Below are positions 25,936-64,000 of a stretch of DNA of 64,000 bases, one piece after another. The notes beneath the pieces are model-generated. The model saw only the letters and a list, made by a program, of their open reading frames with translations, had not been told where the DNA came from and searched no databases. Both the position numbers and the translations under genes were made by a program. The stretch comes from Haliotis rubra (Eukaryota): the NCBI RefSeq assembly GCF_003918875.1, contig NW_025767277.1, forward strand, positions 1-64,000, written 5' to 3'. Position 1 is the stretch's first letter. Each line of letters begins with the position of its first letter.

Positions 25936-26045
25936 TTACCTGTCCCATTGTTGTTGTTAATCCCTTTGATGTATTCCCCCATGTTGTCTTACTCAATCCC
26001 TGTTACGTGTATATAAGTCGGTTCTGTGCTGTATTACTTTACTCT

Positions 26046-29171: not shown

Positions 29172-31538
29172 CTACGATAGCTTTGTGAAGCGAGGCCAGG
29201 TTCTGTTACCTTCTCTATGGGGTGGTACACACACAAACTCTACAAAAGGCAAGGTCATAGAGGAATGTATTACCAATAATGATTTATGTATTTCTAATGA
29301 TTCCAATACATATTTGCACCCTGCTACAGGCACATATTCCTCACTTGATTTGTCACAAACAGATTCAAGACTGCTCAACGAATTCGAATGGTCAGTCCAT
29401 CATGACCTTTGTGGAAGTGACCATTTACAAACTTTACTTTCACTCGTTCATCCAGCTGATCTTCCCAATTCATCAAGAGATAATTTTACAAAGGCAAATT
29501 GGTCTTTATTTGAGACATTATGCCAACGTACAAGTACACCTGAGACCCAGAATTGCATCTAGCAGGCACTCCAATTAAAACTCTCGAGGAAGCTAAATTT
29601 CTGGGAAATATATTTGACGAACATCTTACTTTTCTTACCACATATTAAATCTCTGAGGGCTCAGTGTCTCGAAGGCACTTGATTTATTAAAGGTTGTTTC
29701 AAACTCCAAGTGGGGGAGGGGACCAGTTAACCCTTCTTCACTTATACAGATCACTCGTCCGTTCTAAACTCGACTATGGCTCCATCATTTATGGTGGAGC
29801 CTGCAAAAGTAATCCTAAATCGTTGGATTCTGTTCACCACTAAGGTGTCAAACTTCGTTTTGGATCTTTTCGAACTTCTATTGAAAGTATTTATGTAGAG
29901 GTTGATGAGCCATCTCTAACAACGCCGCACAAAATTATCCTTACAATATATCACCAAACTATATTCTAAAGAGTCTAACCCCTGCAATTAACTGTGTTTT
30001 TAATCCTCTTCACGAGGATCTGTACAACAAGAAGTCTGCTGTTATTCCGCCACTAGGAATAAGAATTAAACCCTTTCATGCTGGCATTAGTTGGATAATA
30101 TTTCTCTTTTGCGCATACTTTTTCTCCTCCTTTGCAGTTAGTGAGACCAGAAGTTGACCTATCACTCACACCATTTAAACAATCTGAAACTAATGAATTA
30201 CAATATAAACAAGAATTTAATCAATTAAAAAGTAAATACAATACATACAAGTCCTTATTTACAGATGGGTCCAATGATGGTGGCACAGTGGCTTGTGCCA
30301 CTGTCATTGGATCCAGAACAATATCTTCTCGACTACCAAACAACAGCTCTATTTTCACAGTGGAAGCTAACGCCATATTAACAGATGTTAAATATGTTAA
30401 TAGAGACCATAAATATAAACAATACATAATATATTCAGACTCTCTTCATGCCTTCATGCTGTAAAATGTGTCTTCTCAACATCCACTTTTAATTGAAATA
30501 CTAGAATTATTCAACGATCTGGCTACTGGTCAGTGCAACATCGTCCTCTATGTTGGCATTTCTGGTAACACAATGGCTGATCTTGCTGCTAAGGCAGCAC
30601 TCAACAAATCTGTAACACCACTACTGATCCCATATTCCGATTAGAAAGCTGTCGTTAGATCTTATATCCGTGATCTAATGCAAAAAGAGGTAGGACACCC
30701 AAGTAGGTATCAATAAATTAGATGCAATAAAACCAGTTATCGGTTACACCTACTTGGGTTGTCAGTCCAGATTGGAAGAGGTCATTATGCGACGATGTCG
30801 TATTGGCCATACTATATATACTCATGAGTACATATTTAAAGGCGAGGATCCTCCGTTTTGTATCCCTTGTGATGAAAGAATCATGGTCAAGCATGTCCTG
30901 CTTGACTGCATAGATTTTCCCATCACAAAGGCTAAATATGTCAGCGTTAAAACTGTTAAGGATATTTTTTGATAATGTTAATCATCATTTTATTATCGAG
31001 TTTTTAAAAGAAATAGAATTGCTTGCGAAAACGTTTTGAAGGGGGTTGAAGTATCGTAAACTTATTGTCCTTCTCAGAGGGTACGTCAGTCCCAAAACGT
31101 CAAAGTCAATTTTGCTCTACCAAACTTTTTAATCGTAGTATGTTTGTTGCTTTTAATAATGGCTACACCTCCGTACAATCTCAGCGGCTGTAGGGATGGT
31201 GTAGATCCAGCTAGGGTCCAGCTTGGGATATACGTAAATTTTGAAATTATGAATAATGATCTATTTATTCATTAACACACTGATAAAATATCAATCATAA
31301 AAATACCAATATCTCTAACTTATTTTGTCCAGTATATTGTGTATTGTCCAAATAATGCTATTAGTTTTAACTTTACATGCTAGTTTTAATTTAACTGCAA
31401 TAGTCTAGTTGTTTTACTGTCCTTGATCACAGGTGTTATAATACATACATATTGTTTATAAACATCCAATTTCTTCTCGTCACGATATGGCTGAAAATTG
31501 CCGATGTGACGTTGACTTTAACTCACTCACTCACTCAC
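29172..31538 (+). mobile_element. Nimb/I-group LINE remnant (APE fragment, most of RT deleted, RNase H, CCHC, 3' UTR)
   Basis: WGG...TY..P.TGTYSSLDLS...GSDH; LFTDGS, SIFTVEANAI, IYSDSL, GISGN.MADLAAK; CIPCDERIMVKHVLLDC; (ACTC)n tail. Confidence 0.9.
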
Positions 31539-34700: not shown

Positions 34701-37087
34701 ACAGGCTATAGATCGCAAACAACTGAAGGTAGATAACCATACTAGGAACCATGGGGACTTACATTACTTTTGCTACCTGCATGGACCCTATGCTGGAGTT
34801 ACATCATACCTCAATTTAGACACATCTGGCCATACATTAAAATACACATATTCTACGATTAACAAAGTGGAAAGTTCAATTTACTTTGAATGTTTTGACT
34901 TACGTACCACCCAGGAACCTTGAAGCTGATCACCTGATCCCGTCACGCTCCATACGACAAACGTGAACTGATGAAGACTTTTCTTTTATGCATCAGGAAC
35001 CATAGTTCAGCTGCAGTAAATTCACCCCATACAGTATATCTGGTGACAGTGTCAGTACAGTACATTTGGCTTTACACGTATTGGTTCGAATCCCATACCC
35101 ACCCTGATTATGGTTACTGGGTTGTCAACGCTACAACACTCTTCCCATGCTACCATTTGTCTCACGGCTTTAAAGTCTGCAGACCCTTTTTGTTAAAGGT
35201 CAAACCTATAAAAACAAAATAGACTACACTGTACAGTTTCACAATGGTTAGTTCTGTCATTATAACTAGTACAACACTGGAAATGTTGCTAGTGAGCTAC
35301 AGTGAGTTTGCCAAGTCAAACAGCTCCTGATCACCAAAGTCATTCCTGAAAGACTGACTGAGTTTGGTTTTACGCCGCTTTTTGAGCAATATTCCAGCAA
35401 CATCACGGCGGGGACACCAGAAATGGGCTTCACACATTGTGCCCATGTGGGGATTCGAAACCCGGTCTTCGGCGTGACGAGCCAGCGCTTTAACCACTAG
35501 GCTACCCAACCGCCCCATTCCTGAAAGAAGCATCTGCGTGTGCTTGTTTTGTTTTTGCCGGTGGATCGACATCCTGTACAAATCGCTACATTGCGAAACA
35601 TGAAAGGGTGAAGGTCATTTCAAAGTTCCTCCACACAACTAGGCTTTCTACAAAAATCAATTAGCAAACAAGTTATTACTTGTGAAAGACTGGTGGCGAC
35701 ATTCCTATGTGCAAACCGTTGATATACCAGGAAGTGAAAACTGTAAGTTATCGTAACATGATGGATCATGGATGATTCCCTAACTATAATAAAGAATACA
35801 ATTATGGGGAATGATTCCATTTGTAAAATATATTGACAGATAATTTACAGAAGGCCACAAAGGATTGCAAATATTTGAAACTGCCGGCCCGATACATAAT
35901 AACAACCGGCGCCAGGCCTCGGGCCTCGGGCCAGCGATTATTTCGAACGCTAGTCTCACCTGCATCAGGATCCACCATCAGCTGACATCCAATGACACCT
36001 GACGAGACACTGTGACGGAAATCACTAGCGAATTACCCTATTTCCTCTAAGATACGCCGGGGTATGTATTCGCCCTTAATAAAAAAAGATTAAGGCATGG
36101 TCCTTTTGGTCATAACTTCCTGTCCTCCACAAGGCGGCTAAGCTGGTGAAAGGGTTTTCATGTGTATAAATTTTGTATGGGAACCGGTGCTAGAGGAATG
36201 TTTACAGACCAATCCTAAATCCTTGTAATGGCTTATGACAGGTATGCTATATCGATAGTGAAAGACAGCAAGCGGACCTCCAATAAGCCCGGGTCTGAAA
36301 GTCCGTTGTAAAAAGCACCTGAGCGCTTATTTGAGGAATATACTTTAAACATTAAATATTCCTTCTGCAGTAGGTGATAATATACTGAGTCAAAAAGAAA
36401 CTTCACAAAATGTAATTTGAAAATAATGAATAATTTTTCTGATGATGATACATCTATGTATCCGAAATGGGATCCCTATCTTTCGACCCTAGAAAACGTT
36501 AGCAAAACCCACTCAAACCCATCCATTCGTCGTGCAAATGACGTTAGTGCCAAATCAGGTTTTGCACGTGCAGTCGATCACGTGATCTTCGCATCGAAGT
36601 TTTCTTCATATGCACGTGTTTGCATTGGCCTCAAGAATTGAAAAAACACTTTTAAACCACATTTCTAACGGTACTTGAAATGCCACGATTGTCAAATGTG
36701 CAACGTCAACGTGTCGTCTGCTGTGGGCCCAACGTCACCTCCGATGGACCCAGAGAGACTGGAATCGAGTCGTCTTTAGCGATGAATCCAGGTTTACCCT
36801 CAGATTCGCGGACGGCAGGCATAGAGTCTGGAGACGACGTCGTGAACGGTATGCCCAATGTTGTGTACAGGAAGTCGACAGATTCGGGGGCGGAAGTTGC
36901 ATGGTTTGGGGTGCTTTCTGTGGGAACAACCGTTCCCGACTTCTGGTCATCCGTGGAAACCTCGCAGCTGCTGCTTACCGCTACCAGGTGCTCACCCCTG
37001 AACTCGTTCCTTTGATGGCAGCTCATCGCGTCCCAGGTCTACAGTTCCAGCATGATAATGCTCGGCCGCATACCGCGATATTGACAC
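31704..37087 (+). repeat. ~2.7-kb direct tandem duplication (31704-34401 and 34402-37087)
   Basis: Near-identical units differing mainly by 1-2 nt indels. Junction at ...gatattgacac|aatgtaaccttatc. Confidence 0.9.
31810..32218 (-). mobile_element. Nimb LINE 3' UTR fragment (second copy at ~34510-34910)
   Basis: Reverse-complement similarity to 31060-31520, including catggctgaaatattgccgatgtgac. Confidence 0.65.
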
Positions 37088-37172
37088 GAAATTTCCTTCA
37101 AAACGCTGGAATCAACGTCATGGACTGGCCATCGAGGTCCCCTGACCTTAATCCAATAGAGCACGTTTGGGA
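36381..37172 (+). mobile_element. Tc1 transposon, internally deleted, right end missing (partial copy at 33696-34400)
   Basis: Left end tatactgagtcaaaaagaaac. Reads MPRLSNVQRQR, WNRVVFSDESRF, GGSCMVWG, FQHDNARPHTA and WPSRSPDLNPIEHVWD (DD34E-type). Confidence 0.9.
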
Positions 37173-37926
37173 TGCAGACATTGTAAACCCATGTTTTGAA
37201 CGGCGGTGTAGCCTAATTTGTGTACATACACTGCAACGAATGTCCCTTGTCAACCAAGGTAAAGTAACACTAAGCACTATCAAATTTAGATCAAACAAAT
37301 AATTGAGAAACGAAAGGATGTACAAATGGAAACGACTCCCAGGTAAAGGAAGAAAGGAGATTACGTGCCCTCAGTTGCAAAATAAGTCATGGTTATTTCT
37401 TTGACATGCATCGGGTGGTCAGGCTTGTCTGACACATGTCGAATCCCAGTTGCGTAGATTTGGTGCCCATGATCACTGGATTGTCTGGTCCAGACGCCAT
37501 TATTTAAAGACCACCACCGTATAGCTGGAATATTGCTGAATGAGGCGTTTAACAGCACAGAAACAAACAAGCAAACTGACGAATGATTCCAGGAATCCCT
37601 GTATTAGTATTGCAATCAATGTGTATTCTAGAGTGAATGATTTCGATGTAACGATATATTGTTTTATGATTTGTACCAGTTTCATGAGTAATGAAAGCCG
37701 ATGAAAACTGACATGATTGAAACGTTCTTGGCTAATAAAAAAAAAAAAAGAATTGGCATAAACCATATCAACGCGTATATCACAAGAAATATTTGTTCAA
37801 CTTATGTTCCAATTTTTCATTGGCAGAATAATCTAATTATATATCAAAGGTATTTCATGCTACATTTAAAAAGTCCATACTGGCTGACAACATGAATGAC
37901 TGTGATCAGCAAAGTGGCTATATTTG

Positions 37927-41849: not shown

Positions 41850-41997
41850 NNNNNNNNNNNNNNNNNNNNNNNNNNNNNNNNNNNNNNNNNNNNNNNNNNN
41901 NNNNNNNNNNNNNNNNNNNNNNNNNNNNNNNNNNNNNNNNNNNNNNNNNNNNNNNNNNNNNNNNNNNNNNNNNNNNNNNNNNNNNNNNNNNNNNNNN
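41850..41997. other. Assembly gap
   Basis: Run of N. Confidence 1.
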
Positions 41998-48524: not shown

Positions 48525-51500
48525 GGCTTATGGACACGAAGTCGACCTTTTGAAATTTTGCTATGGACACGAAGTCGACCTGCGGCTAAACTTTGATGTC
48601 GAAGGTGTTGTTAGAGTCACGCTAATCCGCCAGTGGGTGTTGCACAAAGGTATGCACATAGTTCACCCACGTAGTTCACACAAAATGTCACCAATGTCAT
48701 CAATGTTATCATATAAGAGTGATTTTACAATGATGGATATATAAGGAACGAACTTGAGGTAGTTTACATTCAGTTTCGAAATGGCAAATGCACAGTTGAA
48801 TCAGGGATTTCTTCCTACATTTCGTGGTGGCAGATACCTGTGTGTTGGTGGCTTTATGTACCGTGTGAATAAGAGGAGGAAGAGATTGGATATCTTGGAA
48901 GTGCACAGAAAGAACTGTAACTCCACTGCGTCAACCGTCAATGACATAGTGACGAAGGTGAAATGCGTCCATAGTCATCCCAATGTCGAAGTAGACATGA
49001 AGGTAAGTATTTTCTCAATGCCTAATATCAATATGTTACTGTCCAAGAGCGTTCGTTGTGGCTACTCTCGGATGGTAGTTCGGGATGATGGACAAGAGAT
49101 GGAGGTCAAAAGTCAGAGGTAGTATAGTTGAACACAGCAGCAGCCATGTTTATTATGGTTGGGTAATAATGGTCGAAATGGTACATAAGATGGAAATCAC
49201 GTGACAGGACGCACATCGGGACCGAGTGACCAATGTTCCCCGATGTGGAGAACCCGCTCTATCACTTACACACATTCAGAAGTCGGACGGAGATTCTTCA
49301 TCGTCGACGTAGTCGTTGGTGAGGCGATAGCCTTGGCCGACGCGCCCCGACTAGCCGCACGTCGCGTCTCCCCTGCTTGGTCTCGTGTGAGTCCGGTTTT
49401 ATGCATAGGGACATTACGCCACGTTGTGCAAGGTCACTGACCTGTGCACATGTACATACATAATCATTACAAATCATTCTCACCTACATGCCTTTCATCA
49501 TTGCAGAACTGAAAACGCACATTGAGGAACATCTTGTGATTAAAAACATCTTTACACAAGTACATCTGACATATAATGACTTACATGTGTATGTACCCAT
49601 TTTCTCACAAATATGTCACTTTTAAGATTATTAGATGGGGTTGACATATCAATATACCGGCTGAGAATCGAGGTATATCACTGTAAGTCCCTAAATAAAG
49701 AACATGGTAAAATAGACATATCTACTTATTATTTGGTGATGTTAGTCTGTACACTTGGGGTCAGGGTATCCAGATAGCTCTATTATTACTACTCTGTTGT
49801 GGAGATATTCACCCTAACCCGGGACCAGTTAACTCAGATTTAAGTATTGTACATACTAATGTTTGTAGTCTTACTGATAAAGTAGACTTAGTTTACGCAG
49901 AACTTCATGAATATGATGTTATATGTATATCAGAAACTTGGTTGCATGATGGTATTTCAAATTATGACATTCTTATGCCTGGGTTTCATCCGCCATTTCG
50001 TAATGATAGACAGACTAGGGAGGTGGTAAGCATAGGCCTGACTTACAACTTCCAGGACTAGAGGCAGTGTGAGCGTAGATCACGTGTAAAACAAGAGTTA
50101 TGTTGTCGGTACGTTTTATCGTGTAAATGCTAGTTCCCACTACTGGAATCTGATTGAAGAATCAATAGGCTTAGCGATAGATACTAATATTAAGACTATA
50201 GTACTTGGGGACTTCAATGCTAATTCGTTGAATAGAATAGATCCTAACATTGAACGTATTAAGACAATTTATGGCATGACGCAACTGATAAATGAGGCGA
50301 CACGTATTACTCAACAATCGAGAACACCTATTGACCTAATATTTGTATCGTGTCCCGATATTGTAAATTCCTCGGATGTTACTCCCCATTCTGCAGTGAC
50401 CATTGTTCAGTTAGCGTGTCGCTGAAAATCTATTAAACAGATGAAAGAAGCCTATTCAAGATTCATTTATAATTACGATAATATTGATATAATTTCCTTT
50501 CGGCAAAATGTGGCTGATGTTAATTGGGATTTTCTTACACAAAATGATGATGTTGATGCCATTGCTTCAAAAATTTGTTAATACATTAACAGACTTTATG
50601 TAAATCAAATATTCCAAATAAAACTGTTGTGATTCGTCCAAATTATGCTCCGTGGATGAACGGATTTTTAAGAAAACTTATGCGTAAGAAAATAGAATTC
50701 ATAGAAAGGCTAAACGTAGTAACTTGCCTAATGATTCGGAAAAATTTAGAAAAAAAGTCGAAATAAGCTTATCCTCAGAGATACGTAAAAGTAAGTCATT
50801 GTATGTTGAAAAGCTTGATAATGTTGTCAATACAGAACATGGTAGTAAGTTTGACCGTTTTCTTCCAAAATACGTCTACTTGCACTTGTGGCCATCATTA
50901 TGAAGATGCCATTCATTTCTATTTATCTGTCCAAATTTTAATACAATTCGATCGAAGTGTTTCTATTACATAAAATGGTTTTAATATTCAATCTGTACTA
51001 TGTCGAAGTTACTCATATTCTGACGAAATCAATGAAAATATTGTAAAATCTGTACATGACTATTTTACATTAACAAAACGATTTTTTACCTTATTGATTA
51101 ATTATACTACTGTCTTTTTCATTAAGTCTTTTACTCCCTCAAATGGTGTGTTCTCTTGTCTGTAATGATGAATGCTATAAAATGTTTCCCATCGCATTGT
51201 ATTCGAGAGGTACTTTTATAGGCTTATAGCCTGTTTACCAATCCGTTCATTTAATAATGAATAAATATTGTTTAAATCACATGTACAAACATAAGATCCG
51301 CCGACGTGGGGAGATGTTAATTGACATTTACTGATGGCATTGAGAATTAAGGGTCCTGCCCTGAGGGGGTTTATGATAAAAGGGCTACACCGAATGATTG
51401 CTGAATACATTAAACAGACAAAGGGGATAGAATTTCGGTGCAATTTGGATATATATGGAAACAATTGACATTACTCTATGACATTACAAAGAAAAATATA

Positions 51501-51708: not shown

Positions 51709-53305
51709 GCATTGGCGTTTACGATATCTGGAGGGAGAGAGTTCCAGATGTTTACCGTGTCAGGGATAAATTACCTGGAGTACAAACTAGTGTTGCATTT
51801 AATATTTTGTAGGTCAGAATTATTTCTCAAGTTATATCCACTTACAGATGATACATTTTCTGGAACTAAACTAGACAAAATAATCTGGAACTAGTTTGTG
51901 AACCATTTTGTAAAATATGTATAATTTTTGACTGCGTCTTCTATTTTCAAGTGAGAGGAAATATTTGTCTCAGAATGTAGTCTGTTATGACTTGTGTAAG
52001 CTGCGAACAGCTCCGCAGGTAGTTCTGATAGCGTCTAGATTTATTTTCGTCTAGAAGAAGCGTTTGCTCTTAGTGCAATTATCCCATACATGACACGCGT
52101 AGTCAAATATTGGTAAAATGAATGATTTGTACATTGTCAGCAGAGTTTTCCTGTTGAAGCGATATTTATAACTTCTTAGGCAGTTTATCATTGGACCGAC
52201 TTTTATGACTTTTTTATTGCCAAGAGTTACACAAGCGCTTAGAGTAAGTGGTGACCTTCATACAGTCACAAAGAGCTAAATTAAATTCTATGTGACGTTA
52301 GCGAAAAAAAATTCAGTGTGTTGTATTTTATATAAATGATTGAGAAATAAAGTAGAGAAATACAATAGACAATAACTCATACACATACATAAGTCAACCC
52401 TAAGGAGTTTAGACAGTCGATATAATAAGGCAATAAGTCAAAATACGCAACATCACCTAGTCTATTCACAAGAAGTGTTTACCATACAGTCTATGTACGA
52501 CCGTGATTCTAAATAGTGGCTGCTCAAATATGTTCAAACTGTATACAGAAAAGGAGGTCATATCTAAGTGAATAATCTACATGATAACACACAGTTTCTT
52601 GCCTTCCGAGCCTTCTCTTATGTGCACACAGTGCCACAACAACACACCCCAGCTCAGTCATGCCTGACCTATTGAGTTTCAGTTGGGTAGTGAATGCAAT
52701 ACCCTTCTTGGTTACAGCATAAGAACGCGTCCCACCCCAGACTATATGTCTTAAACCTCAGTGATGTATTTAGCAATCTCGTGTCTATCCATCTAATGAT
52801 ATGATACATGACAAATTATTTTCCATATAGCTGTGAGGTGAGACTGAACAATCCGCCAGCAAGTCATGTGCTATGTATCCTCCACCCGCTGATGTTGTAT
52901 CGGCACGTGACTGAACAGGTTTTTCTCGGGGAGAAGCAGACGACATTACCAGAAACTAGATATCTCGATAATATAACAGCGCGTGACACAAACGAGTATG
53001 CGTGTCTTTTATGTGAGCTTACATAGAAGTAACAAATCTACACGACTCCCGCTATACACGACGAGAAGGAACAGAAACAAAAAAAACAAAACATATATTA
53101 GCATAAGTCATATTAGTCACTTAACGATGTATGTATAGAAGTATCCAACACAGAGAGGAACAAGAGGAGCGTGACCTTTATTGAAAAATTGCTTACTAAA
53201 GAGACGACGCTACCTACTGAACATGTATTCACATTTCTACCGCATCAAAAGGTTATATTCCGCGGAATTACACAAACGCTATTTAAGTACGTACATATCC
53301 CAGAG

Positions 53306-53345
<40 letters not shown>

Positions 53346-53804
53346 ATTACAGTCACAAGCGCTACCGTTATCATCGGAAGCCATTATTGTCATTACAACA
53401 AATGTCTGAATATTCAGTGGAGCGTGGTATGTAGACCACTGTCAAGACACTCCCACAACTATACCGCGAGGAAGTTGAAAAATCATAACATCGGTAACTA
53501 CATTTCCAACCAGATCGACGTGCGTAGAAAATGTCAAGCACATATTAAAACAAAACACACAAGATTCGCATACACATTCCACTTTAGTTTTTATGATATC
53601 CTTGGAAATATAATTTCCCATATAAAGGTGAAATATGTTTTGTTTCTTTTTTGTTTTGGGGTATGGCGAGTATCATGCGGGTATAATGTTAAGTATTTTA
53701 TCATCAGTCATAGTGTCAATGTCGATATGAAACTCCATTTGTAACGCCACAAGCCCCACGTCACAAGTACACAAATACCCCATTCAAAGATACAACTCTA
53801 TTGA

Positions 53805-54590
53805 GTTAAGTTGAGTTAGGCTTTACGTCACATCGGCATTATTCCAGCCATATTGTGACGAGAACAAGTTTGCATTAGTAAACATTGTGGAGTACATACT
53901 CGGAATGAGTTTTATTTCAATTACATATATTGATTACGTTGTCATTTAAAAGCAGAGAAAGTCATAGCATCAAAATTAAAGGCAGGTAATTTGTTAGTCA
54001 CATTTCATAGGTACAATTTATGGTTGTTACATTTCGCAGTTACAATTTATGATACAGATCAACTTCCCTCAGGTAGTTCACTATCAGATGAGCTCACGCG
54101 GGAGAACAGATCTTTTAGGTTTGTTGCATCATAATGTGAGTCCCTTTGCAGAAGATAAGTCCACGCATTCAAGCAGAATATGCTTGATGGTGAAAACCTC
54201 ATCGCAAGAGACACACATGGGGTCCATACCCCATCCGTTTTCAGCAGATAGTCATGTAAATCGACTGTGGCCAATACGACATCTTCGTAAAATTACCTCA
54301 TCACGTCTTGACTGACAACCCAAGCAGGTATAACCGATTGTTGGCTTCAATTCATGGAGTTTGTTTCTTCCTACTTGAGTGTTCCACCTTTTGCATCAGG
54401 TCCCGAGTATAGCTTTTTGATAGTGGGTTTGAAATCACTGTACGGGATTAGCAGTGGAGAAAGGGGGCTTGTCAAGAGCTGCTTTTGCTGCAGCATCGGC
54501 CTTGGTGTTACCTGCTATGCCGACGTGACCCGGCAACCAGCAGAGGACGATGTCACATTGGCCAGTAGAAAGGTCATTGTAAAGTTCTAA
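53805..54590 (-). mobile_element. Nimb/I LINE 3' fragment inside the Maverick
   Basis: DIVLCWLPGHVGIAGNTKADAAAK (RNase H), RRCRIGHSRFT, CVSCDE..TIKHILLEC and the Nimb tail atggctggaataatgccgatgtgacgt. Confidence 0.85.
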
Positions 54591-55305
54591 TTTGTCCAGG
54601 GTGATTTGGGTGACTTGAAGTCACATTTTGAAGTGCTTGAAGGCAGGATAATGAATCTGTAAAAACGATGAAGTTTTGGAATGTTTTGCTGTTGAATGTA
54701 GGTCAATTGGCCAACTCTGACTGAGCACCTATAGTCCTCCTTTCGCTGGAGTGAGCACACCTCCGACCCATTCACTTCATTCCATAAGCCAAACACTGGT
54801 GTACAAAGACGCGACCCTGAACAAAGATACTACTACTCCTTTATATTGTTGACGACTCAGTAGGTCAGAATGTATGTTGAAAGTATTCGTTCCCAGTCCA
54901 CTTGACCCCATGTCTGTCTGGATTTAACACAATCTTCTTAGTCGACCGATTACACGAGTGGGTAAAGCCTGTATTTGTACCCATTACTGAGAGAAAACCA
55001 AACAACGTGCATGAGCTATAACATATTGTTTTATTGAACCAAAAGCTGTGGTGTAAGTTAACATACATTCTCACAATGATATATATATATATATATATAT
55101 ATTTTACATGTACGAGAAACTGAATTCTACCCGGTAAAATGTCGCTATAGGGAAACCAACACAGAGTTCCGAGGTTCCATGTAACACTTTCAGTGATTCT
55201 GAGTTCCATGTAACACTTTCAGCATATCAGAAAACCTTGTGGTGTCGTCGCAACACAGCATACTGTTTGGACATCATGCTTGCAACACTCAAATATTGTT
55301 TATGC

Positions 55306-56036
55306 TTAATTAATCTGATCATTATCATCATCATCATCATCATCACCACCATCATCATTATCATTATCATCATCATCATCATCATCATTATCATTATCTT
55401 CATCAGCCATGTCAGAGTCAGTGTCACTTTCCGCCGCCGCTTCGGGCATATCTATACGAGTCAGGATGTCTTTCATTTTGGGCTTTAAAAAGAGTTTAAT
55501 TATATTTTTAAGGACTGATGGATCCGTGGAAGGGTCGATATCATCCAAACTGCTAAGAATGGGTTGAAACAGAGGTGCCTGTTTAAAGCATTGTGTGTAT
55601 TCTATCACGCAGCTGAGACTATTGGCTATTTCATTTTCCTACAACTGGTGCATAATTCTGTCCACCAATTCATCCGTTCGACCCTGCTGCTGTTACTTAT
55701 TTCTCTTGAGTTTCATCACTTCGTGGCGGAAGTTATACACCCGCTTCCAGATGCATTGCAAACCCACGTCTTGCCACTCCTCGGCTTCCACGTCAGCGTG
55801 CGGCGGTGGCTGCTTCCCCCACGACGACGATGTGTGACAACAGGACGATCTCCGCCTCGACCACCCTTCTGGGGAAGGGGAAGTCACTGACACCATCATC
55901 ACTGACAATCTCATCATCACTGTCACGCCTTCTTTGACTTTAAGGTAGTATTTTCTGGACACTAATATTTGATATGGCGCTGTAGATCATACATGTTATC
56001 TATCAGCACCCCACAATCAGCACAAGCCTTGGCCAT
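55306..56036 (-). pseudogene. Maverick accessory gene with N-terminal zinc finger and acidic C-terminus
   Basis: Reads MAKACADCGVLIDNMYDLQRHIKY*C, later IEYTQCFKQAPLFQPILSSL, and a poly-Asp tract from the (ATC)n repeat at 55316-55400. Confidence 0.6.
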
Positions 56037-56183
56037 CGTGAACAGACCCCGACTACTACTACTACGCATGTCAGAATCCGTGTCTTCTTCTTCCCGAGCG
56101 AGTTGATTATTATGAGGATCGTTTGAGCTCTTCTTCAGTCGTGGTCAGCTTGAGACGGATACTATCTGGAGAGGAGGCTCTCG

Positions 56184-57050
56184 CTATGCTTGTGGTACTG
56201 GTGAACTGCTGCTCTGTCGGTGTATGCTGCGTGCTCTGAGCTTTAGCACTCTCCTCCTTGGTTTTATAATGTTCACGTTCAAACGGTCCTTGTCGTTTCT
56301 GTTAGGTTTCAGATCAATAGTCAGTTGTCCAAAAGGTTGTCCTGCAACCCGTTCATACATGGACAAGGCGATCAATGTTTTCAGGGAAGATTCTACGAGC
56401 AAAGACCCTGATTTGTTGTCTGTCTATGGGTGAATGAAACAGTGTAACATAATGAGCATTCAAAGCAATGTCTCTGGATTCTCTTTTACCTCGGAAAACA
56501 GGTTTTGTACTAGAAGAAAAATCATCAGCACATTCTTATGATGGGAGGTTTGAGTAAACAGTCTAGAGATACGTTTGTCTTGTTTTGCTTCAGCCAGGTA
56601 ATCATCCAAGACCAACACACTGCACTGACGAGCGTCAAAGTAATCTTCCTCTAATATATCGTAGGGAAGTCCTTTCACAAATGTCACTCGAAGCGATTGC
56701 TCCTTTATGGTCTGATAAAGTGGTTGCCACTGTGTGTAACACCAAACGATATGGTCGGGGAGCGTTGATCAAGCAGCACTGAAGCAGCAACACGGTAGGT
56801 AAACACAGACTTTCCACAACCATTCGGTCCAACAACGAGAACATTCGAAGGGATCAGAAACTTGAATCCCTCATGTCTGTCCATATCATCCGGAGGAGGA
56901 GGAGGAGGAGGAATAGGAGATAAGAATAGTCGTTCCGTGCCTTTGCTTCTGATGTCTCTGTAGGTTGTCTTTCTGTGTAAAAGTCATCCCGCAATCTGAA
57001 CAGGTGGTCGTCACGTCCTTAGGGCAAGAGGACGACGTCTTATCCGTCGT
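56184..57050 (-). pseudogene. Maverick packaging ATPase (A32/FtsK-HerA) with upstream C2H2 zinc finger
   Basis: FKFLIPSNVLVVGPNGCGKS (Walker A 56807-56830), VLVLDD, LFTQTSHHKNVLMIFL.VQNLF, IALNAHY and PFGQLTIDLKP. CSDCGMTFTQKDNLQRHQKQRH at ~56935-57005. Confidence 0.88.
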
Positions 57051-57399
57051 AGGGCAACAGTGAAAATGGAGCTAGATTACCCAGTTGGTCCCTTTTATAT
57101 AGATACCCCTGCAGACCTTTCAGTTTTCACGGCTCTGATACAACTTCTTCTTGTGTCCAGCATAACATGTATGATCGTTATACATACTCTTCTGCGCCCA
57201 TAATAACCATGGTGAGCATACCAAAACCTCTATACTAAGCCGATGCTCTATCAAGCAGACAGGCATTTTGAATGGCATCATCTCTGAGCGCATTGAAAAC
57301 TGTGGTTTCAAAACAAATGCTACAATAGGCATGTAACTGGCGAAAAACTCTTCCAAACACCCACAGTAGTCTATAGGTAAACTAATCTTCGTAACACTG

Positions 57400-57612
57400 C
57401 TAGATAGTTATTTCTATCATTTTCCTTAGGAAACGACGTCTTTCATATCGAGTCACTGGTAATCTTCCCTTTAATAATCTATTGATGATAGCATTGACGG
57501 CAAGGATCTGTTCTCTGTTCTTTTCTAAGATGTCTTGTCGAATTTCCATAACGTCTTGAAACATTAACATGAACCTTAAAGAGTCGCAATGTTTCAACAC
57601 GTACCTAGCCAT
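57400..57612 (-). CDS. Small conserved Polinton-type protein
   Basis: RQDILEKNREQILAVNAIINRLLKGRLPVTRYERRR resembles the short Polinton R.AIL...I.AI.E...N.LKGN.PL...K..L family (recalled). Confidence 0.55.
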   Translation of the reverse strand: MARYVLKHCDSLRFMLMFQDVMEIRQDILEKNREQILAVNAIINRLLKGRLPVTRYERRRFLRKMIEITI

Positions 57613-58175
57613 AATCCTAGAGAAAACAAGCTCTTTACTCCTGTCGTTGTTGGCGCCTCGATGACTTTCATATTTCGAGTCAAACCGTATTTATACAACA
57701 ACAAAACAACAACCCAACTCTATACAGACAACCAATGCATATATATCGATTTATTCTCAACTATTCACAACTATATCGTACATCAACACTCATGTGGGCT
57801 TAGGGGCGCATGTGCGTGCATGCATGCGTGCAAACGTGTAGCACTCGGCTCCAACACCGCATATATATAATGTGTGTGTGTGCGTGTGTGTCTGTATCTG
57901 TGCATCTGTGCGTAGGAGCATGCATGCGTGTGCGTAGGTGTTTTGTAGTGCATGGTGCCACAAAGGAGAAAAAAACATACACACAGCAGACATTTTATGT
58001 TTTTTGTTGTTGTTGTATATACTTCAATACAACACACGAACAAATGGTAATACAGATCATGATATTGGTATGACACATTACACCGAGTTTTGAGGGAATG
58101 GTATTACAAATTTATATATATATGTATATAATTGCTATAAGGGATATACTGACATATATCGATGTACACAAAACA

Positions 58176-58388
58176 CTAAGCGTTTAATGCATTTTTATCA
58201 CTAACAAACACAATGAACACTTTTACAAAGATACACAGTAAAGCAAACACCGTAGGTAACATTCTTGAAAGCATAGTACACCCCAAAAACAACAACAGCA
58301 AAACGATAGTGACACCTGCCAGATAAAAAACACAAAAAACGCCAGATATTACACTGACTTCCCCGATGAGACGCACCCGGGATAGCAC
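58176..58388 (-). CDS. Small hydrophobic (2-TM) ORF downstream of the protease
   Basis: Co-oriented, starts immediately after the protease, with two hydrophobic stretches. Confidence 0.3.
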   Translation of the reverse strand: MLSRVRLIGEVSVISGVFCVFYLAGVTIVLLLLFLGCTMLSRMLPTVFALLCIFVKVFIVFVSDKNALNA

Positions 58389-58392
58389 TTCA

Positions 58393-58899
58393 TTATATAC
58401 TCGTACATATAATGGTCATTACCGATATAGTTGTTTCTGGAAAATGGTCGAGTATGTCTCTCAAACGCCATCCTCTCAGACGGAACAATAGATAGTATAC
58501 GACGTATTGTCCGCACGTTTCCCCGCTGGCTCTGGACGCGGTGTGGTTCCAAATAAGCACTCTTCTACTCCTTCCGCGACAACGACGGTATCTGTAGGTG
58601 ATGTTGTTTATCTCATCCACAAAATCGTGTACTTCTTTTAATCCGCGAATCATGCCATGGTCGTATCCTAGGCTGTCGAAAATGTCTATGGTGTCGGCGT
58701 TTACGTAGATGGCAAACCAGTGTTGACCCGCCTCGTGGGCATATTCGGTATTAACTACTATACCAGTTGGCCGCTGCTCATCTCTCACCACGCGCCCCGC
58801 CAAGTGTATTGTTAAATAGTTCAAGGCGAACACTCCCAAGACTTGGTCTCTAAGTATAGGGTCGCGGTGTATGATGCATTCCAGTTGACGAGTGTTCAA
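58393..58899 (-). CDS. Adenain-like cysteine protease (Maverick PRO), frameshifted near the C-terminus
   Basis: MNTRQLECII, GVFA, IVVNT, GQHWFAIY, IFDSLG and TCGQYVVYYL (His/Asp/Cys triad motifs). Confidence 0.92.
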   Translation of the reverse strand: MNTRQLECIIHRDPILRDQVLGVFALNYLTIHLAGRVVRDEQRPTGIVVNTEYAHEAGQHWFAIYVNADTIDIFDSLGYDHGMIRGLKEVHDFVDEINNITYRYRRCRGRSRRVLIWNHTASRASGETCGQYVVYYLLFRLRGWRLRDILDHFPETTISVMTIICTSI

Positions 58900-58936
58900 A
58901 ATAAATATTTCATCCGTTTCACATTTCTTTTCCCTT

Positions 58937-60240
58937 TCACGCTATGACGTTTCTGCTTTTCTCGATCTGAAAAATGTCATCAAATTCCCCATATACAACG
59001 CACGACACTGTCTCCGGGGCGGGATCGCGAACTGCGCTTCGAGTCTGAGTGTTCCCTGCTTTTGAAAACTCAGGTATGTTCCATCGTTGTTTTGACCGAA
59101 CACCGGATCGAATGAGAAGATGTACAGCGCGTAGCCACCGTGAAAATCGTCTCTGGAAATATCCACGCAGTTGAGGATTTCGACGTTCGTGCATAAGCCA
59201 ACACCCACTGGAGCAGACCAGATTGACGTATGCCGGGATGATGGATCTTCCGCCGGGCGCTGCTTTCTCCTAAAAGCGCAGTTTCATTGACCCGGATTCT
59301 CCGACTGTGGTGCCATTGCAGAACAGCGCTATTTTGCGAAAGGTCCCAGTTGCCGAAGTTATTAAAGTCACCTATCCCTACAGTCTTAGCGGATACGAAC
59401 CTGGTTACTATCTTGTTGGGTCGAACGCGAAGCTGGTTTGCCCCCTTGAAGATGGAGAACATCTTCACTTCCGTCCTGTGGTATGGGTATTTGGCCGGGG
59501 TCTTCAACAGCGCCTTCTTATGACCCCATATGACACCAGGATTCACGCACACTTTCATAACCTTTAGGGCGATGTCTTCGATATGCACTACGTATGCGGT
59601 GTCCGTCTTGGTCGCCATGAGCAGGTACTGGGGGCTGAATCGGCACAGTTTTACTTGCATGTCGACTTGGTTCAGTGTGTACCACTGCATCTGAAACAGG
59701 TCGTGCATCAGCGGGGACTCGAGGTCGAACGTTTTACTCTCGGAAGTGAACTTGAACCTGCTGAACATTCCCGTGTTGGTCCCGTTCGGATCTGTGGCGT
59801 CCATCTCCCCTGCAGTGTCCTTGAAAAACAGTTGAGCCTGCATCTTTGTCTTGTTGTCCATGGCGTTGGTGTTTAGGAACGTTTGAATGATAGCCTTGTA
59901 CGGATAGTGGCTGCTCGTCGAGTTGACGAGGTTCCCTTGCAACCATACGTCCACTTGCGAAAAGGGAATGCAGAAAGAGAGTGATGGGGCCCGCATTCTT
60001 CATCGCTACCCAAATGTGAGTTGTCCACTTGAGTTATCCTACATTTAACACACAGCGACGACCTTCTACAAGGTCGAGATATTTCAACCCGTTCTGACCG
60101 CTGATGGGTGCGGATCCGGATAGAGGCGACACCGGGCGGCAATCTTGAAGATTAGTCCTCTCTACGGCAGTTTGCGTTGACAGCAAATGGAATATCGCTA
60201 GTTCTGGTGGTTTGCGTTTCCGTTAGAGCTTTCTGTCATG
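58937..60240 (-). pseudogene. Double jelly-roll major capsid protein (Maverick MCP), several frameshifts
   Basis: PELAIF...TQTAVE, YLDL, GPITLFLHSLFSQVDVWLQGNLV, YPYKAIIQTFL, LMHDLFQM, AKYPYHRTEVKMFSI, GYALYIF, GTLRLEAQF and VYGEFDDIFQI..SRNV. Confidence 0.93.
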
Positions 60241-60292
60241 ATGATGATGACCGCCGTCCTTTATAAGACTTTTATCTTTTATTATTATGTTA

Positions 60293-60699
60293 TTAACCTA
60301 AAATGTCTTCTATAGTTTTCTCCCGCCTGTGTGCCTGCGATAACTTCGTCTTCTTCTTCCTGCCGCTGACGTTCTTCTTCTTCTTCTCCTTCTTGTTCAT
60401 GACAGCTCCTGTCCTTCGGCTATTATGGGTGGTAGGCGGCGATACTTCTTCTTCTCCTCCCTCCCCGGTAAGCGATCGTCTGGCACTGCCGCCTGTTTGC
60501 CAGCGTCCGCGTTTTGTTGTATTGCTATTAAACCCCATTGTATCAGCGCTCGTCTTCGAGACTGAACCAGGTAATGTCGTCGTATCTCGGCCTTCGCTTG
60601 ATCTACAACCTGTTCGTTCGGGCTTACTATTCTTATGTCCTTTTGTGGAAATGACGTTGTCGTCGTCTGGTAGGGCTTTGTTCGAGTTATTGTTGTGTG

Positions 60700-60741
<42 letters not shown>

Positions 60742-60970
60742 AAGAAGTCGCGTGATGCCAGTGATCGTTCTAGCGTGATCATGCTAGATGTCAGTTTGAA
60801 ACTGATAGATGTCACTACTCGCCTAGCCAGCGGTTGTTGCTGCATCTCTTTCCCCTTGGCGACCTCGTCATAGTATTTTCACCACACAGATATGTTCGGT
60901 ATGTATAGTCCGTCCTCGGTTTCGTCTCTTCTTCTCGCGTTGGGGTGTTCTCCAAAGCCGTCCGCCAACA
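60293..60970 (-). pseudogene. Maverick putative core/DNA-binding protein
   Basis: N-terminal LYIPNISVW*KYYDEVAKG and a Lys/Arg-rich C-terminus ending EDILG, located between minor and major capsid. Interrupted by (TG)n. Confidence 0.5.
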
Positions 60971-61004
60971 TTTTTTAAGCACATGGGCGATGTCCTCCCT
61001 CCGC

Positions 61005-61467
61005 TAGACCAAAACGGATATCGCCTCAGTTGAAGCGTCAGCGATGACACGTCAGTATGAATGGCTGGTTCCCCAGCTGCGTCCGTTATGTATACGTCGA
61101 TTTGTTGTACAATGTCGTTGATGAGCCCAATACCGATGTCGTAGGGGTCGTCTATTTTTATGTTCCACGTATAATTGGTCGTGGATGATGTTGTTTTACT
61201 TCAGCGTCGTAGTAGAGGTTGTCGTTCGCCGCCTACGATGATGGGTTCGCATATAGTAAACAGTAAATGTAGAGCATGTCGTCTGTTACTTTCGTCTTTC
61301 TCCCCTCTTCCCTGGGTCCGTTTGACGTAAAATTCTCTCAGGGCGATGGTCCAATGCCCTTCTAGACGTAACGGTTGTAGTAAATATATAGAAAACTTAT
61401 GCAGTTGGTTGTCTGGGAAATACAGAGCGCTGTTGTTGCTGTTACCTACTATCCATTTGTCTTTCAT
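61005..61467 (-). pseudogene. Minor capsid (penton-like, single jelly-roll) protein
   Basis: SNNSALYFPDNQLHKFSIYLLQPLRLEGHWTIALREF ... IIVGGERQPLLR ... IQQ-type IDVYITDAAGEP ... LTLQLRR. Confidence 0.8.
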
Positions 61468-61544
61468 GGTGGGGATCCTCTGGTAACTGTTGTTTTGTGT
61501 GTGTGTGTGTTTTCCCCCTTTTCGCCCGCGTCTGGCTGCTGCTT

Positions 61545-62697
61545 TTTGTGTGATTTCCTTGGCATCTATCCACGAATTGAACTTGGCCGGGAAGCCGGCC
61601 CATTTAACGGAGTGCTTGTTTGGTTCCTCTCATTCTTCATCCTCCCAACAGCCTTTACTGTTCTGTATTTCAAAATACTCTCTATACGCCAAAGTGCTCC
61701 GACTGGGTTTTGCGAATTTTTTCATTTCAGATTGATAAAATGTGCCCTGTATAGGGTCTGATGGCAGGTCTTCTACCCTGTATACAGGTATACCGTCTCA
61801 GCGCTCTCGTTGTGCGACTCTGAAGACCACCTGCATCCATTTCTCATCGTATTCTTTTCGAATGTTCTTTTGTTCGTGGATAGTCGTACGAGATTGCTGA
61901 CCAGCAAAGCCGTAGTTCGCTGGATAATAATGGTGGTGCGTTGGTTCTTCTTCTTCTTCGTGGTTGTTTTTTCCTCTTTTTTCACGATGACGTTTTTCCT
62001 TCTTTACTTTCGTACTATCAAGCCATATCAGTAGCTTCGTTCGTGTGGTCAATGTCGGAGGGGCTCTCCTTTCAGCGACCTATGCGAGGCGGTGGCTATA
62101 GTTATGTAAAGCGATGTCCTGTATAACGTCCGTGTACCGATACGTTCTCCTGTACGTGAAATATCTGTATAGCATAGTTCTAAGCGTTCGGATGAACAGT
62201 TCGGCGTAGTTGGCTTTAATGTCATTGTTTTGTGTTTGATATGATATCGTCTATAAACTTGTTTAACCTTCTTATTTCGGAATTCCATGCCTTGGTCCAT
62301 TCTCAGAGTGAATGGCGCCTCTCTGCCATGGTTGTGAATACGCTTTTCATGGCTCGAGCCATTTTTCCGAGGAGTTTGTTTTCATGGGCGATCCATACGA
62401 ATCTGGAAAAACAGTCTATAATGATAAGCTTAGGTACTTCATACCATCGTTGCTGTCGGTGATGTTCGACACGTCGCATAGAACTCCACTGACTGCTATA
62501 ACCCGGTTTCTCTTGAATCTTGTGCATGGTGCTTTGTGCAGGCTATATACTTCTTGCTCTCTCAACCAATACCTCGCCTGCGATGGGTTGATATCAGGGT
62601 CTTTTCTTTTCAGGGTTTGTACAAACTTTTGATATCCTCGAATGCGCCTGGTTCGGGGATCGTAATAATGACGAGCTAATACTTCTTGAGGTGCCAT
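61545..62697 (-). pseudogene. rve retroviral-like integrase with C-terminal chromodomain
   Basis: LARHYYDP, WLREQEVYSLHK, IIDCFSRFVW, DQGMEF, AELFIRTL, IQGTFYQSEM and VKWAGFPAKFNSWI. Confidence 0.9.
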
Positions 62698-64000
62698 GAT
62701 CTACCTCCCTCCTCTCTCCTACTACCTGTTCACCGCTGACGACAAACACGCGTTGATATTGCTCTTCTTGCCACTGGTCTGTTTTAAAACGCGTATCTCG
62801 GTAGTCTCTGCATTTGATACTTCAGATAATACAAAGGCGATATGGCGCGTAAAGGCGGGTATATGGCTTATGAGGTCTCCACTAGGCGAGGACGGTCTCT
62901 TCGTTTACAGAGGTTAGTGCTTGTTGGAATGTTTTGCGTTTCGTTGATGTTATGTCTTGGGAAATAACGACGAAGTATGCCGTCGTTAATAGACTATCCA
63001 GTGTTCGTGTGATAAGACCATAGTCGATGGTTTCGTTCCTGAACTGATTCATGACAACGTCTTCTCTGTCGACCTGTGTAGAACGTCGTATGGTGTCCTT
63101 TCTCTGATTAAAATGATGACTTGACCCAAGGAATCTGGGATGTCGATATGTGTTTTGTGTAATGTGTGCTTGACATTTTCTACGCACGCCGATCTGGTTG
63201 GAAATGTAGTTACTGATGTAAGGATTTCAACTTCTTCGCCGTATTGTTGTATGTGTCTTGGTGGTGGCCTACATACCACGCTCCGCGAATATTCAGCCAT
63301 TTGTTAAGCTGACAATAGACGGGTATTTGTATAATAATAACGATTAGCGCTTGTGGGTGCAATAAAGCTCACTTCTTTCACCTCGATTTTGGGGATATAC
63401 ACGTATATTCTTAGCGCTTGTGTAACTCCTGGCAATAACTCCGTCTTAATCATACGCTTTCGTATATGCGACCTTCAGAATGCACGTAATATTATGGCTC
63501 CTCTCCTTTTGTAGTCGGTGTCAGTGGGTAGACGGTGTGTTTTTGTGGCCCCGCGTGCTTGTGTGTTGTCTTGGTCACCGGGTCAGGGGTCGTGGGACAA
63601 GGCCGTGTCGTTCGTTCCGCATGGTTTGCTGAGGTAGGACGAAAAATGTCAGTCTACAGGGAGCTCTATACACTACTGACGTCTTATATGTTAGTGTTAT
63701 CCAACGATAAGACTGGTTTGATATTCTGAATGTGTTTACGGGTAAATTGAATAGAGGCCGTTTTATTTGGATTAAAATCAACTTGACATTTTTAGCCCAG
63801 TCTGATATTACAGAGAAATTATTATTCAGACATTGTGCTGCTACATTTGGATCGTTTATTACTACATAGAGTAAAGTGTCATCAGCAAACAGACTTATAT
63901 TACTGTTAATGCCATCGACAATATCGTTGATATAAACTAAGAATAATAACGGTCCTAAGACGGAACCTTTTGGGACGCCAGCTGTAACTGGTTTTAATTC

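What the first reader, a model, noticed from the sequence alone, without database searches (positions are those of the whole stretch)
52213..63677. Endogenous Maverick/adintovirus-like element with a full virion module but no visible pPolB
Seen: integrase-chromodomain, penton, core-like protein, DJR major capsid, adenain and packaging ATPase are all co-oriented in ~8.5 kb. Between the intact right end and the left subterminal-repeat remnants I find no family-B polymerase motifs, and only short unassigned stretches remain, too small for a pPolB. Known: Mavericks normally encode pPolB and are about 15-20 kb or longer. Inference: either a post-insertion deletion, or a compact polymerase-less, helper-dependent capsid-forming lineage. 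The second would be an undescribed satellite-like system in a mollusc.
Basis: partly seen in the sequence, partly recalled or inferred. Interest (0 to 1): 0.85.

Follow-up and report, generated by a model that had tools for sequence, protein, structure and literature searches.

The report
Decayed Maverick fossil missing its polymerase
This is an old, mutation-riddled copy of a Maverick/Polinton virus-like element sitting inside a LINE retrotransposon in an abalone-like mollusc genome; its DNA polymerase gene really is absent, but one dead, truncated copy points to ordinary deletion, not to a new polymerase-less virus lineage.

Summary
A Maverick/Polinton-type element lies at 52210-63677, with all recognised genes on the minus strand. 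It is bounded by the two halves of one split LINE reverse-transcriptase ORF. The right terminus is intact and ends in ACTACT, the known Maverick end motif. The left terminus and about 20 flanking LINE codons are missing.

Confirmed genes:
- double jelly-roll major capsid protein
- adenain-type protease
- A32/B204-type packaging ATPase with an N-terminal zinc finger

The integrase with chromodomain is weakly to moderately supported. The penton and the "core-like" protein rest on position only.

The order matches the known vertebrate Maverick module integrase, minor capsid, PW, major capsid, protease.

No family-B polymerase signal was found in the element or elsewhere in the window. The free space is 1.39 kb between protease and ATPase and about 0.88 kb between ATPase and the left repeat. 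That second interval also holds an 0.87 kb nested LINE fragment.

The copy is a fossil. The repeat arms are about 84% identical, and integrase, capsid and ATPase each carry several stops or frameshifts.

The best reading is a defective, deletion-bearing copy. A polymerase-less lineage is not excluded. Interest is low.

The parts
52210..63677 (-). Whole Maverick/Polinton-like element as it stands (11.47 kb), genes on the minus strand
   Evidence: Bounded by the two halves of one split LINE RT ORF. Inverted-repeat arms. Gene content.
63149..63677 (.). Right terminal inverted repeat. The inner ~300 bp (63149-63445) is homologous to the left arm. The outer 232 bp has no left counterpart. The terminus is ACTACT at 63672-63677.
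   Evidence: The end motif 5'-(AGT)2//(ACT)2-3' is described for vertebrate Mavericks in PMC8097293.
52210..53559 (.). Left repeat arm, terminally truncated. 53250-53559 is homologous to the right arm. 52247-53249 has no right counterpart. A second copy of the subterminal motif lies at the very edge (52212-52246). A (GT)18 microsatellite lies inside.
   Evidence: No AGTAGT terminal motif on this side.
61552..63148 (-). Integrase (rve core plus C-terminal chromodomain), a pseudogene. At least 8 interruptions (stops or frameshifts). The N-terminal bound is approximate.
   Evidence: rve E 0.0026 and Chromo E 0.017 on single open-frame pieces. The chromodomain part of Mytilus protein P0024 matches 61552-61902, E 3e-10. 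Interruption count.
60540..61467 (-). Minor capsid (penton) candidate, assigned by position only. A pseudogene with at least 3 interruptions.
   Evidence: It lies between integrase and MCP, as mCP does in vertebrate Mavericks (PMC8097293). No Pfam or PDB hit. Count.
60293..60538 (-). Small uninterrupted ORF (81 aa) rich in Lys/Arg, at the position of 'PW'.
   Evidence: translation; no interruption. No family hit. Function not tested.
58940..60222 (-). Major capsid protein of the double jelly-roll type, a pseudogene. At least 3 frameshifts and 1-2 in-frame stops relative to intact relatives.
   Evidence: P0003/P0006 cover residues 10-438, E to 3e-55; Haliotis proteins 67-71% identical. Model of P0003 with Foldseek hits to a bracovirus-borne Maverick protein (5e-18), Sputnik MCP, D13, PBCV-1 Vp54 and PRD1 P3.
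58396..58941 (-). Adenain-like (clan CE) cysteine protease. An uninterrupted 182-codon frame with His, Asp and Cys candidates present, but no ATG where the relative starts.
   Evidence: Peptidase_C5 E 0.034 for the window frame and 1.6e-4 (above the cut-off) for relative P0008, which is 60% identical. ASFV S273R protease 6lj9, E 0.0073. Translation.
57009..58395 (-). Unassigned 1.39 kb between protease and ATPase. One of the two places where a polymerase could once have been. No long open frame on either strand.
   Evidence: No Pfam hit better than E 0.007, and none to a replication protein, in 30 open frames of at least 30 aa on both strands. At least 8 interruptions if read as coding.
55306..57008 (-). 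Packaging ATPase of the A32/FtsK-HerA type, with an N-terminal C2H2 zinc finger and an acidic tail. A pseudogene with at least 1-2 frameshifts and at least 7 stops.
   Evidence: Pox_A32 1.9e-8 and Adeno_IVa2 in relatives. (STIV/STIV2 B204 packaging NTPase is the top 14 PDB fold hits). Count.
54678..55309 (.). Unassigned element DNA downstream of the ATPase (632 bp). Contains an AATAAA, an (AT)n run and a 20-nt direct duplication.
   Evidence: No family hits.
53812..54677 (-). Nested 5'-truncated LINE fragment (RNase H and C-terminal zinc-knuckle region plus 3' end)
   Evidence: Colinear with window 30418-31525. RNase_H E 7e-4 and zf-RVT E 0.013 among the open frames of this interval. Sequence read.
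53560..53811 (.). Unassigned element DNA (252 bp) between the nested LINE and the left repeat arm
51843..52209 (-). Left flank: downstream half of the host LINE RT ORF that the element split
   Evidence: Matches window LINE 20656-21015.
63678..63997 (-). Right flank: upstream half of the same LINE RT ORF. About 20-22 codons of the LINE are missing between the two halves.
   Evidence: Matches window LINE 21079-21405. The reference LINE carries RVT_1, E 9e-31.

Best explanation
This is a genomic fossil of a Maverick/Polinton (adintovirus-like) element. It integrated into a LINE copy and has since decayed.

Shown:
- It keeps one canonical terminus.
- It keeps the conserved morphogenesis module in the known order: integrase, minor-capsid position, small basic ORF, double jelly-roll capsid, protease. 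A packaging ATPase lies on the same strand.
- It has no family-B polymerase gene.

Inferred:
- The polymerase was lost by deletion, either after integration or in a defective progenitor. The loss was in one of two intervals flanking the ATPase: 57009-58395, or 53560-55305 where a LINE fragment later or simultaneously inserted.
- The copy is now inert. It makes no capsid and cannot replicate or move.
For: Boundaries and age:
- The flanks are two colinear halves of one LINE RT ORF. The right junction falls exactly after ACTACT.
- The repeat arms are about 84-86% identical.
- The left terminus and about 20 LINE codons are missing, so at least one deletion has demonstrably hit this copy.

Decay:
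- Lower bounds on interruptions are 8 in the integrase, 3 in the MCP and 9 in the ATPase.
- An 866-bp LINE fragment is nested at 53812-54677.

Absence of the polymerase:
- No DNA_pol_B or DNA_pol_B_2 hit, even at E up to 1, in the open frames of the element's unassigned regions, nor at E up to 0.01 in the rest of the window.
- The element's own free DNA is 1.39 kb plus 0.88 kb.

Priors from the literature:
- Mollusc Polintons encode pPolB (PMC10748475).
- In vertebrates pPolB lies next to the ATPase. Intact elements are 12.7-24.6 kb, and 96% of loci are degraded (PMC8097293).
- Partial Polinton copies are common in C. elegans (PMC11414722).
- About 10.6 kb of own DNA plus a 3-4 kb polymerase gene would fall in the normal size range.
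Against: - No polymerase remnant and no recognisable deletion scar was found. The deletion is therefore inferred from priors, not seen.
- No target-site duplication of the nested LINE could be read, so its insertion cannot be tied to a loss.
- Pfam scanning of short open frames in a gene this decayed has limited sensitivity. The other genes gave only E 0.003-0.03 by this route.
- No sister copy was examined.
Confidence: 0.62

Rival explanations
1. The copy belongs to a family of polymerase-less Mavericks that spread using the polymerase of a full-length relative. These could be a non-autonomous deletion derivative or a truly compact helper-dependent lineage. The layout seen here would then be the layout in which it integrated.
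For: - The morphogenesis module, the integrase and one canonical terminus are all retained while only the polymerase is missing.
- No polymerase remnants were found in either candidate interval.
- Relatives that replace or lack pPolB exist elsewhere in this virus group: Tlr elements with a helicase (PMC4028283) and PLVs and virophages with other replication proteins (PMC11161782).
Against: - This is one copy only.
- It is demonstrably damaged by other deletions and insertions.
- No alternative replication gene was found.
- Mollusc Polintons described so far carry pPolB.
- Most Maverick loci are degraded fossils.
Confidence: 0.2
2. A polymerase remnant is still present but is too decayed and internally deleted to be recognised. 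The most likely place is the 1.39 kb between protease and ATPase.
For: - That stretch is on the coding strand between two module genes, has no other assignment, and is as interrupted as the neighbouring pseudogenes.
- The Pfam route is weak on such fragments.
Against: No DNA_pol_B-type hit at E up to 1 in 30 open frames of at least 30 aa on both strands. In vertebrate Mavericks small conserved genes of unknown function (PM, PZ) also lie next to the ATPase, so the stretch may hold those instead.
Confidence: 0.12
3. The missing polymerase is an assembly artefact, a collapse or mis-join inside a repeated element.
For: The window is repeat-rich and holds one assembly gap elsewhere.
Against: - There is no N run inside the element.
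- Both flanks are colinear halves of one LINE.
- The inverted-repeat arms pair as expected.
Confidence: 0.04

Closest known systems
Maverick/Polinton elements of animals (Orthopolintovirales; 'adintoviruses')
   Same: - Inverted-repeat ends with the AGTAGT...ACTACT end motif on the preserved side
- rve integrase with chromodomain
- Double jelly-roll MCP, adenain-type protease and A32-type packaging ATPase
- Module order integrase, mCP position, small ORF, MCP, protease, as in vertebrate Mavericks (PMC8097293)
- Nearest protein relatives are in Haliotis, Gigantopelta, Pinctada and Mytilus
   Different: - No pPolB
- 11.5 kb, against 12.7-24.6 kb for intact vertebrate elements
- The ATPase lies on the same strand as the capsid module; in vertebrates this is reported only for Xenopus tropicalis
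- All large genes are broken, the left terminus is lost and no target-site duplication is readable
Degraded Maverick 'genomic fossils' (Barreat and Katzourakis 2021) and partial Polinton copies in C. elegans
   Same: Stops, frameshifts, foreign insertions, missing ends and missing core genes in single loci.
   Different: None in kind. Here the host is a mollusc and the gene lost is the polymerase.
Tlr elements, polinton-like viruses and virophages (relatives that lack pPolB)
   Same: A capsid module plus packaging ATPase without a family-B polymerase.
   Different: Those carry another replication protein (S1H, S3H, primase or PolA fusions). None was found here. The capsid, ATPase and integrase here are of the animal Maverick type.

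Membership tests
Maverick/Polinton | Terminal inverted repeats of tens to more than 1000 bp | tested here: met
   About 300 bp of arm homology, 84-86% identical in the best part. The outer parts differ between the arms.
Maverick/Polinton | Canonical end motif and 6-bp target-site duplication | tested here: inconclusive
   ACTACT lies exactly at the right junction. The left terminus and about 20 flanking LINE codons are lost, so no duplication can be read.
Maverick/Polinton | Retrovirus-like (rve) integrase | tested here: inconclusive
   rve E 0.0026 and Chromo E 0.017, both below the Pfam cut-offs. A C-terminal match to a Mytilus chromodomain protein, E 3e-10. No PDB match.
Maverick/Polinton | [quoted passage not shown] | tested here: not met
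   No DNA_pol_B-type hit in the element or elsewhere in the window. The free space is too small.
Maverick/Polinton | Double jelly-roll major capsid protein | tested here: met
   Homologues in molluscs. The model of relative P0003 has low confidence (pLDDT 47), yet its significant Foldseek hits are almost all DJR capsid proteins.
Maverick/Polinton | Single jelly-roll minor capsid (penton) protein | not testable with these tools
It is assigned by position only.
Maverick/Polinton | Adenain-like maturation protease | tested here: met
Maverick/Polinton | FtsK/HerA-type (A32-like) packaging ATPase | tested here: met
Polinton-like viruses / Tlr-type elements | Alternative replication protein (helicase, primase or PolA fusion) in place of pPolB | tested here: not met
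   No such domain in any open frame of the unassigned regions. The only P-loop protein is the packaging ATPase.
Helper-dependent (satellite-like) lineage | Several independent insertions sharing the polymerase-less layout, with genes under constraint | not tested
This needs sister copies. The one copy here is not under constraint.

The most novel reading that the evidence does not exclude
The window holds a dead member of a compact family of mollusc Mavericks that kept integrase, capsid, protease and packaging ATPase but no polymerase, and that spread with the replication machinery of full-length relatives. This would be a capsid-forming satellite of an animal Maverick.
Probability: 0.12. Interest if true: 0.65.

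Novelty: new member of a known kind. Interest (0 to 1): 0.2.

Why it matters
As it stands this is an ordinary genomic fossil. It adds a mapped example of a Maverick in an abalone-like gastropod. It shows that the vertebrate module order (integrase, minor capsid, PW, major capsid, protease) and the AGT/ACT end motif also hold in a mollusc copy.

It would matter more only if a genome-wide census showed the polymerase-less layout to be shared by independent insertions. That would mean animal Mavericks have helper-dependent, capsid-encoding derivatives, in parallel with virophages and satellites of protist viruses.

Tried and rejected
- Pfam on single open frames gave only sub-threshold hits for the decayed genes. 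Intact relatives had to be used instead.
- The PDB sequence searches of pieces from the left region, the integrase and the penton candidate found nothing useful. Profiles of the MCP and ATPase families also found no informative PDB sequence match.
- The protease search returned a single relative.
- The representative search with the 92-aa P-loop piece returned mostly unrelated P-loop proteins. One true relative, P0013, unlocked the ATPase family.
- I considered that the 560-aa P-loop protein might be a replicative SF3 helicase, because of a weak RNA_helicase hit. I rejected this: relatives carry Pox_A32 or Adeno_IVa2, and the fold matches the STIV B204 packaging NTPase.
- I considered that the polymerase might lie outside the repeats or elsewhere in the window. 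I rejected this: the flanks are two halves of one LINE, and no polymerase hit occurs in 1-51800.
- I looked for terminal repeats or duplications that would mark 52247-53249 as a nested insertion and found none. An alternative is loss of this stretch from the right arm by recombination between two copies of the subterminal motif. This is untested.
- 'F54H12.2' is not mentioned in the paper library.
- An exact look-up of the host ankyrin ORF, to name the species, found no record.
Full report
**1. What is there**

The region has no long open frame. The longest is 309 aa, and all recognisable coding signal is on the minus strand.

Two inverted-repeat arms frame it. 53397-53559 pairs with 63149-63305 at 86% identity over 163 bp, E 2e-44. 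A full alignment shows arm homology of about 300 bp, 53250-53559 against 63149-63445, and none further out. Over the first 200 aligned columns identity is 84%, K about 0.18.

A 17-nt subterminal motif occurs three times in the window, where 0.3 are expected by chance. Two copies lie 1041 bp apart in the left arm and one lies in the right arm.

**2. Exact limits**

The DNA just left of the element (51843-52209) and just right of it (63678 onward) are two colinear pieces of one LINE reverse-transcriptase ORF. I judged this against another LINE copy in the window at about 20.1-21.9 kb, which carries RVT_1 at E 9e-31.

The right junction falls directly after ACTACT at 63672-63677. This is the end motif 5'-(AGT)2//(ACT)2-3' reported for vertebrate Mavericks (PMC8097293).

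On the left there is no such motif. The outer 232 bp of the right arm has no counterpart there, and about 20-22 codons of the LINE are missing between the two flanks. The left terminus was therefore lost together with a little flanking DNA, and no target-site duplication can be read.

Because the flanks belong together, nothing of the element lies outside 52210-63677.

**3. Genes, reading the minus strand from 63.1 kb downward**

- **Integrase (about 63148-61552).** One open-frame piece gives rve at E 0.0026 and another gives Chromo at E 0.017, both below the Pfam cut-offs. The chromodomain-bearing C-terminus of a Mytilus coruscus protein matches 61552-61902 at E 3e-10. The PDB sequence searches gave nothing. 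I rate it probable.
- **Minor-capsid (penton) candidate (61467-60540).** No evidence beyond position.
- **Small basic ORF (60538-60293).** An uninterrupted 81-aa Lys/Arg-rich ORF. Its function is untested.
- **Major capsid protein (60222-58940).**
  - The longest open frame finds 'uncharacterized protein F54H12.2-like' of Haliotis asinina and H. rubra at 71% and 67% identity. Relatives also occur in Pinctada and Gigantopelta.
  - Relatives of 434-441 aa map over nearly their whole length to this interval.
  - An AlphaFold model of relative P0003, built from only seven sequences, is poor (pLDDT 47).
  - Even so, its significant Foldseek matches are almost all double jelly-roll capsid proteins. 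They include a Maverick-type protein carried by a Cotesia bracovirus (E 5e-18), adomavirus LO7, virophage and Sputnik MCP, vaccinia D13, PBCV-1 Vp54 and PRD1 P3.
  - TM-scores are low (0.2-0.36). The fold assignment rests on the consistency of the hit list, not on a good superposition.
- **Protease (58941-58396).**
  - This is an uninterrupted 182-codon frame.
  - Its one relative, P0008, is 60% identical and passes the Peptidase_C5 cut-off.
  - The frame itself matches the ASFV S273R cysteine protease at E 0.0073.
  - Candidate His, Asp and Cys residues are visible in the translation.
- **Unassigned (58395-57009).** 1.39 kb with no assignment.
- **Packaging ATPase (57008-55306).**
  - The P-loop piece led, through the representative search, to a 560-aa relative (P0013) and its family.
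  - Members carry an N-terminal C2H2 zinc finger. Two of nine carry Pox_A32 (1.9e-8) and one carries Adeno_IVa2.
  - The family model has pLDDT 80-90 in the ATPase core. Its 14 best PDB matches are the B204 genome-packaging NTPase of STIV and STIV2, with target TM 0.50-0.59.
  - A replicative helicase is therefore unlikely.

The order integrase, minor-capsid position, small ORF, MCP, protease equals the 'second module' of vertebrate Mavericks (integrase, minor capsid, PW, major capsid, protease). In those elements the polymerase sits in the other module, next to the ATPase (PMC8097293).

**4. State of the genes**

Counts only:

| Gene | Breaks |
|---|---|
| Integrase | at least 8 interruptions |
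| Minor-capsid candidate | at least 3 interruptions |
| MCP | at least 3 frameshifts plus 1-2 stops against intact relatives |
| ATPase | at least 1-2 frameshifts plus at least 7 stops |
| Protease | none, but no ATG at the relative's start |
| Small basic ORF | none |

Together with the divergence between the arms, they make this an old, inert copy.

**5. The missing polymerase**

I scanned every open frame against Pfam, each on its own:

| Frames scanned | Region | E-value limit |
|---|---|---|
| at least 40 aa, both strands | 51800-56500 | up to 1 |
| at least 30 aa, both strands | 56950-58450 and 60100-61500 | up to 1 |
| at least 30 aa, minus strand | 61100-63700 | up to 0.1 |
| at least 95 aa | 1-51800 | up to 0.01 |

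No DNA_pol_B or DNA_pol_B_2 match appeared. The one 'DNA_pol_phi' hit lies in the Asp-rich tail of the ATPase and is compositional. No primase, helicase or Rep domain appeared either.

The interval between the ATPase stop and the left arm (53560-55305) also contains an 866-bp nested fragment of a LINE 3' end at 53812-54677. This fragment is colinear with window 30418-31525 and explains the RNase_H and zf-RVT hits. That leaves about 0.88 kb of the element's own DNA there, plus the 1.39 kb between protease and ATPase.

Sensitivity is limited. The same route gave only E 0.003-0.03 for the genes that are certainly present, so a short remnant could be missed.

**6. Interpretation**

Mollusc Polintons described so far encode pPolB (PMC10748475). 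Polintons are defined by pPolB and integrase and measure 15-20 kb (PMC4028283 and PMC5718144). Intact vertebrate Mavericks measure 12.7-24.6 kb, and 96% of loci are degraded fossils (PMC8097293). Partial Polinton copies lacking one core gene are common in C. elegans (PMC11414722).

This copy has about 10.6 kb of its own DNA. It has demonstrably suffered one terminal deletion and one nested insertion. Adding a 3-4 kb polymerase gene would bring it into the normal size range.

I therefore favour loss of the polymerase by deletion, in this copy or its immediate defective progenitor (confidence about 0.6). The deletion itself is inferred; no scar or remnant is seen.

A family of polymerase-less, helper-dependent Mavericks remains possible (about 0.2 for any non-autonomous family, about 0.12 for the stronger satellite-like reading). 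It cannot be judged from one dead copy.

**7. What was left out**

The test that would decide between these readings is whether sister copies carry a polymerase. It requires fetching DNA of related Maverick or adintovirus-like loci from public collections.

No contig that I take for human was met. The N run at 41850-41997 was left as it is.

**9. Host**

The nearest relatives of the MCP and ATPase are from Haliotis species, then other gastropods and bivalves. This supports a mollusc, probably a vetigastropod. The species was not identified.

Noticed in passing
window 7202-8521: About 190 tandem copies of a G-rich 7-mer (GGGGTTG), also readable as a 21-mer. GC skew reaches +0.85, and the array produces spurious long ORFs in all frames.
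   Followed up: partly
window 25022-25948: A young tandem array of a 74-bp unit, 12.5 copies, 96% matches, in a strongly C/T-skewed stretch.
   Followed up: no
window 915-1772 and 2274-3151: Two further satellite-like arrays: a 49-bp unit x17 (with a higher-order 151/299-bp period) and a 32-bp unit x27.
   Followed up: no
window 15213-16238 (minus): An uninterrupted 340-aa ankyrin-repeat ORF (Ank_2 E 3e-82). It is possibly a host gene or exon. An exact look-up found no record.
   Followed up: partly
window 19953-22413 and 50500-51279: 50500-51279 is 96-97% identical, in inverted orientation, to two separated parts of the LINE region at 19.9-22.4 kb. This indicates a recent, internally deleted second copy. 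It is far younger than the LINE copy that the Maverick split.
   Followed up: partly
window 36679-37299 (plus): A DDE_3 (Tc1/mariner-type) transposase fragment, E 1e-11.
   Followed up: no
window 52212-52246, 53253-53290, 63406-63438: Three copies of a ~30-nt subterminal motif. The single right-arm copy resembles the outer left copy in sequence (91%) and the inner left copy in context. This would fit loss of ~1 kb from the right arm by recombination between two motif copies.
   Followed up: partly
window 55306-57008; proteins P0013, P0017, P0022: The packaging ATPase of this mollusc Maverick group carries an N-terminal C2H2 zinc finger, a possible second zinc-binding element and a long helical, acidic C-terminal half. 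It is about 500-560 aa, roughly twice the usual size. One Haliotis copy is annotated as 'translation initiation factor 5B-like'.
   Followed up: partly
window 41850-41997: An N run of 148 bases, left untouched.
   Followed up: no
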